Shown one piece after another: positions 35,401 to 49,900 of a DNA stretch of 64,000 nt. A program made the translations under genes and the position numbers. The notes beneath the pieces were generated by a model. The model did not search any database, had not been told where the DNA came from, and saw nothing but the letters and a program-made list of their open reading frames with translations. Every line of letters starts with the position of its first letter. Position 1 is the stretch's first letter. The stretch is from the NCBI GenBank assembly GCA_965285935.1, contig OZ260661.1, forward strand, positions 94,054,001 through 94,118,000. Direction: 5' to 3'. This DNA is from Ophelia neglecta. Taxonomy: Eukaryota.

Positions 35401-38400
35401 GGGGACTTGAAGCTCAACTCCAATTCTGATATAAGCCCTGGGATCAGGGAGAATTGGCCTCATCATCTTGTTGATTTAGCCGAGGCCGCTTCTTAGTTTT
35501 CTCCCAAGACAGATGATGGAGCAGGTAAAGTCTGGGGATTGACATGGCTACAGCAGCAATGATGAATGTCCTGGCTGGCACCGCTCTCCATGTTCAAACC
35601 ATTGGCAGAACATGGCGAACAAGACTGGGATGAACTGCGCACAATGCAGGGGGAGAGAGGGGGTCGGCATTTGCAGAAAATCTCTCCCTATCTCTCACCC
35701 CAAAGTCTCACCCACATTTAACACAAAACAGTGTGAGAATGTGGGGCAGTTAGCACCATAGCCAACCCTCAGGTGTTTTGACTTGGCTGCAGTGGCAAAA
35801 CTGTAAAAATGGCTAGCCGAGGACATATATCTCAACACATTAGTGTGAAAATGGTGTCCAAAGCGATCCTCATAAACTAGTCACTTGAGGGCTACAGGAA
35901 GACTTGTTCCCCAACTGGCCATGGTAAAGTGAGATGCTAATTGTTTTCCTCCGTTTTGTTACCTGTACCATCTGAAAATGGAAAATTACCTGTCAAAATT
36001 ACCTTAACTTGTACTGGCTGTTTCAAACCGGGAAGAAATGGGGAAATAAAAAAAAATTGGTTGTCAAAAGAAAGGAATTTACAGAGCTTAAGTAGCTTGT
36101 TCATGTCACAGGAATTTTTCAAAATTATTACCTTGACCACACAATCTTTTGAACTAACTACTCTGAATATTTCAGATGGCAGGTCTTGGGTCATATAATA
36201 AGAGATAATTTTCCATCCATATAGCCAGGTTTGAAGAAGGTATCCAAACTCATTTGGCAATTTGGTGGCTGTCAAAATTGAGTCCATTTCGGTGTAGGTG
36301 GCAAATATTTGAGTGAATTTGAGAATGGGGCAAATATGAATAATACATAAAATGAAGTCCTTTGTACATAGTTTATTCCTCATCTGTCATTGTCAAAGTC
36401 ATGCCAATATGTTGTTCCTTTTAGTCAACCAAATATCGGGCAAAGGAAGCTACGCAATGAGCAGAGTGTCACCTGATGCGGCTGGTGTCACAGAAATTTT
36501 GACAGCTCAATTTTGCACGCTCTCCAGTTCAACCTATTCTAAAAGTTTGATAGATTTTGTCACCGGCTTCTTGCTATTTGTCACCTTCTGTTGCAATCTC
36601 CCATGAAATTAATTCTGCCCTTAAAGTCATGGCGGGATGAACTGGGTGACTTGGGCCAGAGTAGCTCTGTTGTAGGTATAGAAGACTAATGAAGAAAGTG
36701 GCCAAGAGGCCAAAACAAGTCAATAGAGGGTTTATTGCATGCATGGTACGAGGCAATATTTAACTTGGCCAAAATGGAGAGCTCTCTATGTGACAGGTGG
36801 GAAGAAATCAAGGACCCTTCGCCCCAACGCCACTCTTTCAATCTCCTATAAAAACTCCACATGGCAATCACTGGAAAATCAAATTGGTTAGTTTGAAGAG
36901 TAAAGTGTGCAAAATTATCACAAATAATTGTGCTTTGCTTTTGTTACTGTTCAACTTCTAGTTATTCATTGCGACAGTTGTTGACCATTGATGAGTCTAT
37001 CAAAATTGCCGCATCCAATTGAGATGGCAATGACTTGGAAAATCGACTGAAATGCTCTTAAGTGATAATAATCTGCAATATAATTCAAGTAGACTTGAGA
37101 TTGTGGTGGTTGAACACAGAAGGACTTATTGTTTATCTGTTGGCACCAAAACACAACTAGAGAAAGTTTCTTAAGGTTTTGTGCTGCGTTTTACATCAAG
37201 GGTATTTCCTATTTATACCTGAATTTGTAGTGGTGTAAAGATAATGTGATTAGGTAGCCCCCTTGGGTGACCATGTTACATTACAACGTCAGTTGATGCT
37301 TTCTTCCTGCACTCCCTTGTCCCCGGATATTAACTGAATATTGTCTGAATTTCACTGATTTCCTAGTCGCTGTCGCACAATCTGATTCATACAACCACAG
37401 GATTTGCAAAGGCTGTAAAATTGAAATTGCAACATTTTTGTGAACACCCGGATGTCGTAATTGGGATTGGTTGGAGCTTGGTGTATGCCCTTGTCAGTCT
37501 TGAGCCAGGAAAATTGTTGGAGAATTGTGCTGGGTGCCATTGTTACGCACAGGATGCAGGGCCCCATGCTTTCTTCCCTCGGAAATGGCTCGAGCCCTGA
37601 GATTTGACTGAAAATTATTTCCTTCTCAATGTGGAATGGAGATGGGTTTCTTCCTGGCAGCAGTCGTATTGCTCGCCATGTGACAAAAACTGCTGTTTGA
37701 ATTAATGATGGCCAGGAATATTCTCCCAACTCGGGCAAAATGGCTTTTTGGCTGTCTGAAAAAAATTGGTAGGTCAATTTAATGCCACTTTCAAAGGGGA
37801 AAGGATAATATAATTGGTTAGATTTTAGTAATAATTTTGATGTTCACTGGATATGGATGGTACAAATAAAATTTATGTGCATTATAAATAAAACAAACAC
37901 CTGCCATCATAAAAAAAATGAAAGGGTTTGAATGTGGGAATGTGAACATTGATCATTTGTGTTAGAATAAGTGGAATCCACTGGCCATAAAATGATACCG
38001 GTAATCACCCCACTAATTATATGTCCATGTGGATGGCAAATTATATCATTAAATTGTAGAGTATATCAAAGCAATTATAATGCTTTGATTTGTAGAATCG
38101 ATGGTAAGAGCAGAGAAAAACGATTTAATCACCCAATTAGCAGACCTGCAGGGCTTCAGTGGTGTAATTATACAAACTATAAGCAAGTGGATATGTCCAG
38201 AAGACACATAGTTTTATGGACTGTGCACAAGCCAGTTTTGAAGTTTATCAAATTGTGGAGGAAACAATAATAATTTTATGGTATTATTTTATTAATGGCC
38301 TATAATTGTTGCCGCCTGTTTTAGGGGCAGATTAGAGGGGAATGTTGGTGGGGTATGTTTTTGATGTGTGGCACAGGTTAGTACAGTAAATGTGAGACTG

Positions 38401-40197: not shown

Positions 40198-40349
40198 GCG
40201 ATGGTTTAGACAATAGTATTGGGTCTGGTGACGGAGCAACTGACGAGGACTCAGAAACTCCCGGTGGGAGCAAACGACAGAAAAAACGTGGAATCTTCCC
40301 AAAAGTAGCAACAAATATTATGAGAGCATGGCTCTTTCAGCATCTAACG
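40198..40349 (+). CDS. Meis: Meis exon: (G)[50 protein letters not shown], homeodomain N-terminal arm and helix 1
   Basis: [23 protein letters not shown] is the diagnostic Meis TALE homeodomain start. Acceptor tattgttttgcag (AG 40196-40197), donor ACG|gtaaga at 40350, phase-0 end as in other Meis genes. Confidence 0.97.
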
Positions 40350-46300: not shown

Positions 46301-46705
46301 TACGGCCTCCGCTAATAAGACTGATCACCGCTGGGTCAGCCGAATGGTCTTGGATGATTTTTCCTTGACTTTTTATTTGCTGCCATGCGGTGTAGTGTCA
46401 GGAGGAGGCAAAACTGAGTCAGTTGTAAACGGTGGGAGCTTGTCACGCCATTGAGGAGTTATTGTCATTAGGTACCATACCCCCAGTGCCATCCTCTCTC
46501 CCACCAAGCAGACAGTGCTCGTAGTGCCTATATCAGCTTCACACTAAGGATTTATCCAAGCTTTTAGTGTTCAATTTATGTATGGCATAAGCACAGAGAT
46601 ACTCCAGGCATGAGCCTACCCTTCCAACACTAGCACCCTACTAACTGTTGTCCGTGTGTCACTCTGTCTGTAGAACTAATACCCGGGATTTTCATCATTT
46701 TCCAG
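40350..46705 (+). other. Meis: GT-AG intron, phase 0, interrupting the homeodomain at HLT|HPYP (6,356 bp to copy A; 6,496 bp if spliced to copy B at 46846)
   Basis: gtaaga...tttccag, at the intron position conserved in Meis genes. Confidence 0.85.
46172..46201 (+). other. G-quadruplex-forming motif GGGGGAGGGGGTTAGGGAGGGGGAGGGGGG
   Basis: Five G-runs of 3-6 nt with 1-3 nt loops on the sense strand. Confidence 0.65.
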
Positions 46706-46782
46706 CACCCCTACCCCTCAGAAGAACAAAAGAAGGAGCTCGCAGAGCAAACAGGACTAACCTTATCGCAGGTCAATAACTG
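46706..46782 (+). CDS. Meis: Meis homeodomain exon, copy A (divergent): [25 protein letters not shown](W)
   Basis: 77 bp open frame with acceptor ttttcatcattttccag, ACTAAT branch-like motif at 46675-46680 and donor TG|gtgagt. Phase 0 in, phase 2 out. Too short to appear in the ORF track. Confidence 0.88.
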
Positions 46783-46845
46783 GTGAGTACCGTGTTTTTG
46801 CTCTAGCAGCTTTATTTTACCGGCTTTTTGTCCCTTGTTTTGCAG
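46783..46845 (+). other. 63-nt intron/spacer between the duplicated homeodomain exons
   Basis: gtgagtacc...cttgttttgcag. It carries the copy-A donor and the copy-B polypyrimidine tract and acceptor. Confidence 0.85.
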
Positions 46846-46922
46846 CACCCCTATCCCTCTGAGGAACAAAAGAAGCAGTTGGCAACTGAGACAGGTCTAA
46901 CAATATTACAGGTCAACAATTG
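46846..46922 (+). CDS. Meis: Meis homeodomain exon, copy B (near-canonical): [25 protein letters not shown](W)
   Basis: 77 bp, acceptor ctttttgtcccttgttttgcag, donor TG|gtgagt. Differs from canonical Meis [26 protein letters not shown] at only two residues. Confidence 0.95.
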
Positions 46923-49900
46923 GTGAGTAGGCTAGCCCCTCTATGTCCTTTGCCCATCTCCGGGTACTCATTTCCGGGGACCTCGTCCCACGCCCAGGAG
47001 GATCCTGCGACCACTATCGGGCAACTAACGGTCTCTTACTCTTAAGTGGTAGTCTTGTGTCTTTTTACTATAAATATGGTTGTTGTCAGGTAATGCTATA
47101 TGAACATTGTTGACATTTGTTTTTGACATTTGTTGTGTTTGATAAATCTGCTGTGGTTAGTGTTTTTTCTACTTCCTTTAGTCAGTATGTTGTGGTGATG
47201 TAAAAAAAATATTTGATAGCTGACCATCCTTTGACTGGACCTTAATAATGATGAAACTTAAGCAAAAACTGTATTCAGGGTTTTTTGCCAAAGTATATAG
47301 CTGCGACTATGAACTACCTAGCGCAGTATTCTGTTGAAAAAAGAACCAATGGCGTTAGCTACTCAGGTGCAGCCAAATCGCCTACAGCTCTGCCTCAGCA
47401 AAAATGGATATAATAAATGAAAAATCACCAAAAGAATTGCAGGCATAGATACATGGAACATTTATGTCCAATTGAATCAAAGTAATATTCAATCTGCATT
47501 TTCAACTGGGTCAAAAGCTAAGGACTGGCTGGATTGGAAATTGACGGTAACCTTTTGCCATTGGCTTGGCATTTCTATGAATATTTTGACCAGTTAGGTC
47601 CCTGCTGCAGTCTCCAAACACCTGCCTGCTGCTAGCGTGTTGGGATTAGACATCCTGTGCTAGCGTGCATACTGCAAAACATTCTTCCTGCTAAACTTCT
47701 CTGGCTTAACACTGCACAGACTGGCATATATTAATTTCTATTGAATTCATTTGTCAGAAACCCGGAGGGAAGTATTTCAATATTTGGGTATTTTATATTC
47801 TGGTATTACGCTGGGTTTGCGGCTATGGTGTCGGTGTATTATCAGTGGAGATAGGAATCTGGGGGACGAAGGAGAGCTTTGTTAATTACAAAATAATGTG
47901 GCTAGCTGCTAATTGTCTTACCACCTGTTGGGGTCAAGGCAGATCTTGACCCTGGTCATAAATCATTCTGAGATTTCTGCATTTGACAGGGATGTTTTGT
48001 CTCCTTTCTTCCCCCATTCCATTGGTCCAGCCAATCTCTAAGTCGTGGTGCGTCATCACCAATCAACTGGCAAAATACCGGCTCCAAGGCTGGTGGTTAA
48101 TTTTACGAAATAATTATAACAGCCATTCCCTCGATTCTTGTGGGCAAATAATTGAAATTGATTGCAGGCAAACGGGGCCAAACGATAGATGAAGGTGTGA
48201 GTTTATTGTTGGCAATCGCGGGGCAATCATATCTCTCTGTGGGGGGTTGGAGAAGGGGAGGGATGAGATGAAACACGCTCCAGATTAACTCAGCTACTGT
48301 CATGTTTATATTTTAAATGCTTCTCAATTTGTGGAATGCCATCATGTAATTGTCATTTTTTTTCGCCACAATCCATGAAAACTTTATGCCAATTTTTATA
48401 CTGACAGATTCCTAGCTTGGTTAATTAATTGTATCTATTTTTCATAAAAATTATTCTTGATAAATAACTAGTGGGTGATGTTTACATTTCTGTGCACTTT
48501 GAAGTTTAGTTAGCAGTTGTTAGTGTGCTTGTCGTTGGGTTGGCCAGTTGTAGTTGAGAGTTGCTGGAGTTTGTGATGTGTTACTGTGTTGGGTGTGTGT
48601 GCCGTTCAGATGACTGGCTGTACTGTAGTGTGGGGTGTTTGTTTCACGGTGTTGGAGTTGTTTAGGGGTCTGGTAGCTGGTAAGAAGGAGAGTGGGTATA
48701 AGGTTATCTCCTCTTGCTATGCTATGCCCTGCCGAGGCACATAATTAATGGTGTCTGGCCGCTGGAGTGTCAGACAGAATGATATATGATGGTCATCTGC
48801 AAAGGTTAACTTGGGCTGGGTCAGAATGGAAGCCAAAACTAGGCCAGCCGCCAGTCAAAAATAACAGGCAAAAACTGGGAGGATCGCCTGATAAGACAGG
48901 GAGCCAACCACAAAAAATGTATTGACCAATCGCATTGCTGTTTATAATAGGTCAGCCGCTGTGGTTGTGTGCAGACAGCTATTGTAGAATTGATATTTAA
49001 TAAAATTGATAAAAATTGAAAAAAGTACTACAGTTGAGGTGTTCTCTCCCAGCCATTATACGTCCTCCCTGGGGGGGGGGGGATAGGTAGTGAATTGTCA
49101 GTTGGCGTGTTTACAGAATCGATACATTACAGGGTACTGTGAGATTGTAAATGACTGGGTCAGAAACATGAGTGCATCTAGTCAATAGTTAGCCCATCAC
49201 AGGTGCGGTGGAGTGGTGTAGTCATTTAGTTTTTGGATATTTTGTATGAAAAAACATCTATGCAATATTTGTATGATACAGCAATGGTGGGAGTAATTTA
49301 TACAATTTTCATCTAGTGATAATTACCATCCTTGTCTTGGTTGAAAAAGTCGCCCAATCGAGACTACAACCAAGGTTTCCTTTTGTTAAGACATTTAATG
49401 CAAAACTGCATCTGCACAATGCAAAAAGGAAAAATCATTAAACCTTTTACATATGCATTTATTTGTGGTGAATGGGCTTGGAATAATCAAAGGAGCTATC
49501 AGATTGATATGGCAAGATAGTTTATGATATCACCCCATAGTAATTATATCTCTCCACATCAATTGTTTACAACTTGAATTAGAAATGTGCAGAGTGCAAA
49601 AAACGTTGGAATATTTAGTAATGCTTGGTGGCTTGTTTTTGTTTCTTGCCTGATTTGGTATGCATAGCATGCTCAGGAATGGTTTCTACATCTCTTATGC
49701 TTTAAATTTCAAGCATATTTCATTGTGGACGGGGAGCCTAAGTGGGTAAGCCGGGTGATTATGTGCCTCCTCTTACCCTCTGGTTAACCGGCCGCCAAAT
49801 TTCACACCAGAGCCAAGCTCTCGACCGATGATGAATTCAGATTCGTAGTCGATGTGACGTTGTGCCTCACCTCGGCCCCGACGAGAACAATGAGCCAATG

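What the first reader, a model, noticed from the sequence alone, without database searches (positions are those of the whole stretch)
46706..46922. Tandemly duplicated, apparently mutually exclusive exons give Meis two alternative homeodomain cores
Seen: two 77-bp exons 63 nt apart, each with CAG acceptor, TG|GTGAGT donor and the same 0/2 phases. They encode [26 protein letters not shown] (A) and [26 protein letters not shown] (B). My alignment gives 59/77 identical nt, with 8 synonymously changed codons, 5 replaced codons and no indel or stop; the flanking intron sequences are not alignable. Inference: an old duplication with both copies under purifying selection, rather than an assembly artefact or a dead copy. 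Knowledge: vertebrate Meis has a single copy of this exon. C. elegans unc-62 (Meis) uses mutually exclusive exons 7a/7b, which as I recall cover the more N-terminal part of the homeodomain. This would then be a convergent isoform switch in a different exon. I cannot confirm it is undescribed.
Basis: partly seen in the sequence, partly recalled or inferred. Interest (0 to 1): 0.92.

Follow-up and report, generated by a model that had tools for sequence, protein, structure and literature searches.

The report
Two alternative Meis homeodomain exons
An annelid Meis gene carries two tandem 77-base copies of the exon for the middle of its DNA-binding homeodomain; this is the same either/or exon pair reported in the annelid Capitella in 2011, so it is real and old but not a new kind of thing.

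Summary
Exons A (46706-46782) and B (46846-46922) are 59/77 nt identical, with 8 synonymous and 5 replaced codons. Both have CAG acceptors and TG|GTGAGT donors, and the flanks do not align.

The gene is the single Meis orthologue of an annelid. B encodes the canonical animal sequence; A is a derived version.

[quoted passage not shown] 2011 noted in Capitella teleta. I found the same A-then-B order and the same five diagnostic residues in the Capitella genome.

A-type exons sit in frame in full-length transcript ORFs of at least a dozen annelid lineages. Synonymous sites are saturated and replacements are almost absent, so A is strongly conserved.

Other annelids kept only one copy:
- Helobdella and one metagenome contig have A only.
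- Ridgeia has B only.

Including both exons gives a stop codon in B, so productive mRNAs must carry exactly one.

The lineage-by-lineage loss of one copy is the modestly new part.

The parts
40198..40349 (+). Meis exon 8. It encodes the acidic linker and the homeodomain N-terminal arm plus helix 1, up to ..RAWLFQHLT. It ends in phase 0 and is followed by GTAAGA.
   Evidence: As a query it finds Meis proteins, the best being Ridgeia piscesae at 88%.
46706..46782 (+). Exon 9A, the derived copy (..[18 protein letters not shown]). It is 77 nt, phase 0 in and 2 out, with acceptor CAG and donor TG|GTGAGT.
   Evidence: The same peptide sits in frame before FINARRR in transcript ORFs P0160, P0163 and P0166.
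46783..46845 (+). The 63-nt intron between the two copies. Branch-point-like TTTAT and TTTAC lie 27-32 nt from the 3' splice site, which is only 32-37 nt from the donor of exon A.
   Evidence: The corresponding Capitella intron is 141 nt.
46846..46922 (+). Exon 9B, the canonical-type copy (..[18 protein letters not shown]). It has the same length, phases and splice signals as A. If read after exon A, a TAA at 46898-46900 comes into frame.
   Evidence: It differs by one residue from exon B of Capitella and Ridgeia.

Best explanation
This is the single Meis (homothorax-type TALE homeobox) gene of an annelid. Its 77-nt exon 9 encodes the TALE loop, helix 2 and the start of the recognition helix. 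That exon was duplicated in tandem in an early annelid, after the Owenia-like lineages had split off. Copy B keeps the sequence shared by nearly all animals. Copy A carries five fixed changes, in standard homeodomain numbering: 33 Q to E, 36 to E, 37 to Q, 42 I to L and 43 L to S. Each exon is 3n+2 nt long, so only an mRNA with exactly one copy keeps the frame into the FINARRR exon. With both copies, a stop appears inside B; with neither, the frame shifts. The gene should therefore make two full-length Meis proteins that differ only at those five residues. Residues 33, 36 and 37 lie on the exposed face of helix 2, and 42 and 43 in the first turn of helix 3. The base-contacting residues are untouched. 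The pair is the orthologue of the Capitella teleta exon 9 pair published in 2011. What is shown: the anatomy, the orthology, the constraint on both copies, and the in-frame use of A in other annelids. What is inferred: that both copies are spliced in this species, that their choice is regulated, and that the five changes alter backbone contact or partner binding rather than base specificity.
For: Anatomy and frame.
Gene identity: Meis_PKNOX_N exons lie upstream on the same strand at C1:94028456-94037393. The Homeobox_KN profile matches both copies. The Pknox paralogue is a separate gene on C7 with one copy of this exon.
Prior description in Capitella.
Orthology: Capitella scaffold KB309537 has A at L025:35833-35909 and B at 36051-36127, in the same order and with the same five diagnostic positions.
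Use of A: 24 A-type proteins in about 12 clusters, most of them full-length ORFs of transcript contigs, read A and then FINARRRIVQPMIDQ in frame.
Constraint: A orthologues show pS 0.6-1.0 and pN 0-0.07. The window's A versus P0166 has 14 synonymous and 0 replacement differences. The window's B versus Ridgeia and Capitella B has pS 0.8-1.0 and pN 0.04-0.06.
Single origin: with exon 9 masked, all A-type proteins plus Capitella form one clade (SH-aLRT 83) inside an annelid clade (98). Nemertean, brachiopod and mollusc proteins are all canonical.
Each copy suffices alone: Helobdella and contig L032 have A only, and Ridgeia has B only.
Against: In the protein collection I found no single species with both an A-type and a B-type transcript; every member of the A-type clusters that was read is A. 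Several relatives have lost B, so B may be little used here. The window's B also carries Thr at position 36 where almost all animals have Gln. No conserved intronic motif or RNA pairing that could act as a switch was found. The functional effect of the five residues is untested.
Confidence: 0.72

Rival explanations
1. Exon A is in practice the constitutive exon in this species. Exon B is a little-used copy on its way to loss, as has already happened in leeches and other annelids.
For: B is absent from Helobdella and from contig L032, and was not seen within 3 kb after A in L031. All assembled annelid transcripts of the A-bearing clade carry A. The window's B has an unusual Gln-to-Thr change at position 36.
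Against: B has perfect splice signals and an open frame, and 24 of 25 residues match Capitella and Ridgeia B although synonymous sites are saturated. That argues for selection over most of its history. Capitella gene models and the 2011 paper use B.
Confidence: 0.17
2. Exon B is the working exon, and exon A is an unused or only occasionally spliced copy in this species.
For: B is the ancestral type. Ridgeia, whose exon 8 is the closest named match to the window (88%), has only B.
Against: The window's A peptide is identical to that of three other species, against 14 synonymous differences. Its splice sites are strong. A is the form found in transcripts across the clade.
Confidence: 0.07
3. The pair is an assembly artefact or a recent segmental duplication with no biological meaning.
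For: None beyond the tandem arrangement itself.
Against: The copies differ at 18 of 77 nt in a codon-aware pattern. The flanks are unrelated. Each copy is closer in protein to its orthologue in other species than to its neighbour. An independent Capitella assembly has the same pair.
Confidence: 0.01

Closest known systems
Capitella teleta Meis exon 9 tandem duplication (Irimia et al. 2011, Genome Biol Evol 3:551, PMC3140891)
   Same: The same gene, the same 77-nt exon, the same order (derived copy first, canonical second), the same five differing positions, and both copies with AG/GT signals. It is the orthologous event.
   Different: A different species. The intron between the copies is 63 nt here against 141 nt there. 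One residue differs in each copy: A has E where Capitella has D at position 36, and B has T where Capitella has Q. The paper gives one sentence and does not report the spread in annelids or the loss of one copy in leech and tubeworm.
C. elegans unc-62 (Meis) exons 7a/7b
   Same: Mutually exclusive exons inside the homeodomain of the Meis orthologue. Both are 3n+2, so the reading frame enforces exclusivity. The two forms are expressed in different tissues, 7a in intestine and 7b in neurons and hypodermis, and have different functions (PMC4165533, PMC3585033).
   Different: [quoted passage not shown] It is an independent duplication in nematodes. Here the exons are 77 nt, 80% identical in protein, and encode helix 2 and the start of helix 3.
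Homeodomain-less Meis/hth isoforms of insects and vertebrates (cited in PMC3140891)
   Same: Alternative splicing that changes the DNA-binding part of Meis.
   Different: Those isoforms are C-terminal truncations that lack the homeodomain. Here both products keep a complete homeodomain. Skipping both exons here would shift the frame, but that is not the event proposed.
Tandem homeodomain exons in the Lhx2/9 gene of this same genome (earlier scan note s1-734082)
   Same: A tandem pair of homeodomain-coding exons, in the same genome, read as either/or exons.
   Different: A different gene, a different part of the homeodomain, and an unrelated duplication. I did not test it.

Membership tests
Meis/homothorax TALE homeobox gene | Meis_PKNOX_N (Pfam PF16493) domain encoded upstream on the same strand | tested here: met
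   three exon matches at C1:94028456-94037393 (+), 17-26 kb before the window start. The best has E 1.7e-18.
Meis/homothorax TALE homeobox gene | TALE homeodomain (PF05920) with the PYP loop, split into exons 8, 9 and 10 at the conserved positions | tested here: met
   One search shows both copies matching PF05920 positions 6/7-33. Searches give the exon borders, and one search shows the alignment of an A-type protein to solved MEIS homeodomains 3K2A and 4XRM.
Meis/homothorax TALE homeobox gene | Meis rather than its sister Pknox/Prep | tested here: met
   Pknox is a separate compact gene on C7 with its own single exon 9; the best hits of exon 8 are Meis proteins.
Mutually exclusive exon pair born by tandem exon duplication | Adjacent exons of equal length and phase with clear sequence homology | tested here: met
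Mutually exclusive exon pair born by tandem exon duplication | Both copies have working splice signals and an open frame, and both are under purifying selection | tested here: met
   (signals). (saturated synonymous sites, pN at most 0.07 between orthologues).
Mutually exclusive exon pair born by tandem exon duplication | Including both exons or neither destroys the frame | tested here: met
   TAA at 46898-46900 when B follows A; exon 10 is read out of frame if both are skipped.
Mutually exclusive exon pair born by tandem exon duplication | mRNAs of this organism carry exactly one of the two exons, and both kinds exist | not testable with these tools
Records of this genome are left out of the protein collections. 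Indirect evidence: A is in frame in other species' transcripts, and Capitella is reported to make both forms.
Orthologue of the Capitella exon 9 pair | Same order of copies and the same diagnostic residues in each copy | tested here: met

The most novel reading that the evidence does not exclude
The derived exon A is an annelid innovation that produced a second Meis homeodomain core. Lineages then sorted the two cores. Clitellates and others discarded the ancestral exon and run Meis entirely on the new core, the tubeworm Ridgeia kept only the old one, and a few lineages (this species, Capitella) still use both as a regulated, tissue-specific switch with different partner or DNA-backbone behaviour. 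That would be isoform-level subfunctionalisation followed by reciprocal exon loss in a core Hox cofactor.
Probability: 0.4. Interest if true: 0.55.

Novelty: new member of a known kind. Interest (0 to 1): 0.35.

Why it matters
Meis is a central Hox/Pbx cofactor, and its homeodomain is almost invariant across animals. A second, equally conserved version of helix 2 and the start of helix 3 exists in annelids. It is kept for hundreds of millions of years and is even used as the only version in leeches. This shows that the "invariant" core tolerates one specific alternative.

It also offers a natural experiment. The same protein can be compared with two cores in one animal, and each core can be studied alone in related animals.

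For this scan, the practical message is that the finding is genuine but already in the literature for Capitella. It should not be ranked as a discovery.

Tried and rejected
RNA evidence:
- After that I sent none of that stretch to any collection search. I worked beside it, using exon 8 (window:40200-40349), database proteins and other species' loci as queries.
- Only local tools (translate, strand folding, the repeat finder, scripts) touched the stretch afterwards.

Exons were searched one by one by reference, and the joined step was left out.

Splicing switch:
- RNA folding of 46640-46990 gave no unusual structure (z = +0.98).
- Scans for Rbfox, PTB, Nova and GU motifs found nothing shared in position between the window and Capitella.

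Naming the unnamed contigs:
- Run and sample numbers were in no paper.
- Cluster members carried no names.

Other dead ends:
- Owenia DNA could not be fetched because the gene range is too long.
- The 89-kb ENA contig with an A exon gave no DNA.
- The supplement of the 2011 paper is not held.
- Later literature on annelid Meis exon pairs: none found.
- One paper search failed on term length, and one protein query was too short.

Full report
OBSERVATION

- Exon A is 46706-46782 and exon B is 46846-46922, each 77 nt, 63 nt apart.
- Each is preceded by a pyrimidine tract and CAG, and followed by GTGAGTA.
- 59 of 77 nt are identical: 12 codons unchanged, 8 synonymous, 5 replaced, no indel and no stop.
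- The probability of 59/77 matches at this base composition is 4e-19.
- The repeat finder gives a single 92-nt direct repeat at 79% identity, which is the exons plus the splice-site consensus.
- The remaining intron sequence on either side aligns no better than shuffled sequence.
- The upstream exon is 40198-40349 and ends in phase 0.
- The downstream FINARRR exon is not in the window. It lies about 22.7 kb further on at L013:5637-5695 (G000:C1:94123637-94123695), is 59 nt long, and starts with the G that completes the Trp codon.

WHAT THE GENE IS

- The Meis_PKNOX_N profile matches three exons on the same strand 17-26 kb before the window.
- The TALE homeobox profile matches both copies.
- The sister gene Pknox is a separate compact locus on contig C7 with one copy of this exon.
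- The gene therefore spans at least 95 kb and is the only Meis in the assembly.
- Exon 8, used as a query against 1.8 billion representative proteins, hits Meis proteins. The best is from the tubeworm Ridgeia piscesae at 88%, and Capitella teleta scores 78%.
- The host is therefore an annelid, as another agent of this scan also concluded.

PRIOR DESCRIPTION

Irimia et al. 2011 (PMC3140891) compared Meis genes of 22 species. [quoted passage not shown]

I fetched the Capitella scaffold and found the pair at L025:35833-35909 (A type) and 36051-36127 (B type). The order is the same, all four splice signals are intact, and the intron between the copies is 141 nt. The five positions that separate A from B are the same as in the window. 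The window therefore holds the orthologue of a published event. I found no later paper on it.

HOW OLD AND HOW WIDESPREAD

B is the sequence of nearly all animals. A is derived.

Use of A in transcripts:
- A protein search seeded with an A-type transcript ORF (P0007) returned A-type proteins in about a dozen 90% clusters, 24 sequences in all.
- Most are full-length ORFs on transcript contigs that read A and then FINARRRIVQPMIDQ in frame.
- The only named one is Helobdella robusta.

Constraint (Nei-Gojobori counts on the exon DNA):
- Among A orthologues, synonymous sites are saturated (pS 0.6-1.0) and replacement differences are very few (pN 0-0.07).
- The window's A versus P0166 has 14 synonymous and 0 replacement changes.
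- The window's B versus Capitella and Ridgeia B has pS 0.8-1.0 and pN 0.04-0.06, which corresponds to a single residue.
- Within the window, A versus B gives pS 0.64 and pN 0.13.

Tree with the 26 exon-9 residues masked:
- Owenia and three unnamed canonical-type sequences fall on one side of a well-supported annelid clade (SH-aLRT 98).
- All 16 A-type sequences plus Capitella fall on the other side (SH-aLRT 83).
- Nemerteans, a brachiopod and molluscs lie outside, and all are canonical.
- The simplest reading is one duplication in an annelid ancestor after the Owenia-like lineages split off.
- Whether Owenia has an unused A exon could not be checked.

SORTING OF THE TWO COPIES

- Ridgeia has only B. 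Neither tblastn nor blastn finds any trace of A in 34 kb without gaps.
- Helobdella has only A, with no B between A and exon 10. Its assembly gaps lie outside that interval.
- A metagenome contig (L032) has A and then exon 10 about 1 kb later, with no B.
- Another contig (L031) has exon 8, A, and 3.1 kb without B.
- Either core is thus sufficient on its own, and different lineages resolved the pair differently.
- This species and Capitella keep both.

MECHANISM

Shown:
- 77 = 3n+2.
- Reading B after A brings TAA at 46898-46900 into frame.
- Joining exon 8 directly to exon 10 shifts the frame.
- Only single-copy mRNAs therefore encode a complete homeodomain.

Inferred:
- Aberrant forms are probably removed by nonsense-mediated decay, as shown for most 3n+1/3n+2 exon clusters of C. 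elegans (PMC4165533).
- The 63-nt intron places the likely branch points 32-37 nt from the donor of A. That could add steric exclusion in this species. It cannot be the general rule, because the Capitella intron is 141 nt.
- No unusual RNA structure and no positionally conserved regulator motif was found, so the selector is unknown.

Protein differences:
- By alignment to solved MEIS homeodomains (3K2A and 4XRM) and standard homeodomain numbering, the five differences are at positions 33, 36 and 37 (helix 2) and 42 and 43 (first turn of helix 3).
- Residues 47, 50, 51 and 54, which read bases, are identical.
- Ser43 in A replaces the Leu typical of Meis and Pknox. It resembles the Thr43 seen in the Irx-like and Six-like homeodomains of this same genome.
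- My inference is a change in DNA-backbone contact, domain stability or a partner surface rather than in base specificity. This is untested.

WHAT COULD NOT BE DONE

- Searches used the neighbouring exon 8, database proteins and other species' loci. Only local tools touched the stretch.
Exons were searched singly by reference, and the joined step was left out.
- Either/or splicing in this species therefore rests on the frame logic, the conservation of both copies and the Capitella precedent.
- No species in the protein collection showed both an A and a B transcript.
- The main rival therefore remains open: B may be little used here, as it has been lost in several relatives.

VERDICT

The event is a further instance of a published one. 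The new elements are its depth in annelids, the strong conservation of the derived core, and the reciprocal loss of one copy in leech and tubeworm lineages. Interest is moderate.

Noticed in passing
L023:1975-2045 (JGI sample 3300012469, transcript contig encoding P0007): This Meis transcript from another annelid-like species uses an A-type exon cut 11 nt short, at the internal CAG|GT that precedes the NNW codons. It is joined to the FINARRR exon, which shifts the frame and ends the ORF although the rest of the mRNA is intact. The same CAG|GTC is present in both exons of the window. It could be a rare alternative donor giving a truncated homeodomain, or an assembly error.
   Followed up: partly
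P0159 (metaclust, 217 aa): A predicted protein reads two identical canonical exon-9 peptides in a row, separated by four residues (WDGR). It is either a read-through of another tandem pair in an unidentified non-annelid or a prediction artefact.
   Followed up: no
G000:C7:41370735-41373012 (L022): The Pknox/Prep paralogue is compact. Its Meis-domain and homeodomain exons lie within about 3 kb plus one 2-kb intron, and it has a single exon 9. The Meis gene, by contrast, spans at least 95 kb.
   Followed up: partly
G000, 34 matches to PF05920, for example C5:81.22-81.39 Mb, C1:36.056-36.069 Mb, C1:113.254-113.263 Mb, C12:46.222 Mb: There are many TALE homeoboxes. They include a three-gene Irx-like cluster on C5, a triplet of near-identical intronless-looking copies on C1, and single long open frames holding two TALE homeodomains about 330 nt apart (C12, and C1:113.25 Mb duplicated). 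This looks like a spiralian-type TALE expansion.
   Followed up: no
same genome, another piece (scan note s1-734082): Another agent reports tandem either/or homeodomain exons in the Lhx2/9 gene of this genome. Two homeobox genes with duplicated homeodomain exons in one genome may be worth a joint look.
   Followed up: no
window 46922 to L013:5637: The intron between exon 9B and exon 10 is about 22.7 kb, and the intron before exon 9A is 6.4 kb. In Capitella these introns are 5.8 kb and about 2 kb, and in contig L032 only about 1 kb separates A from exon 10.
   Followed up: no
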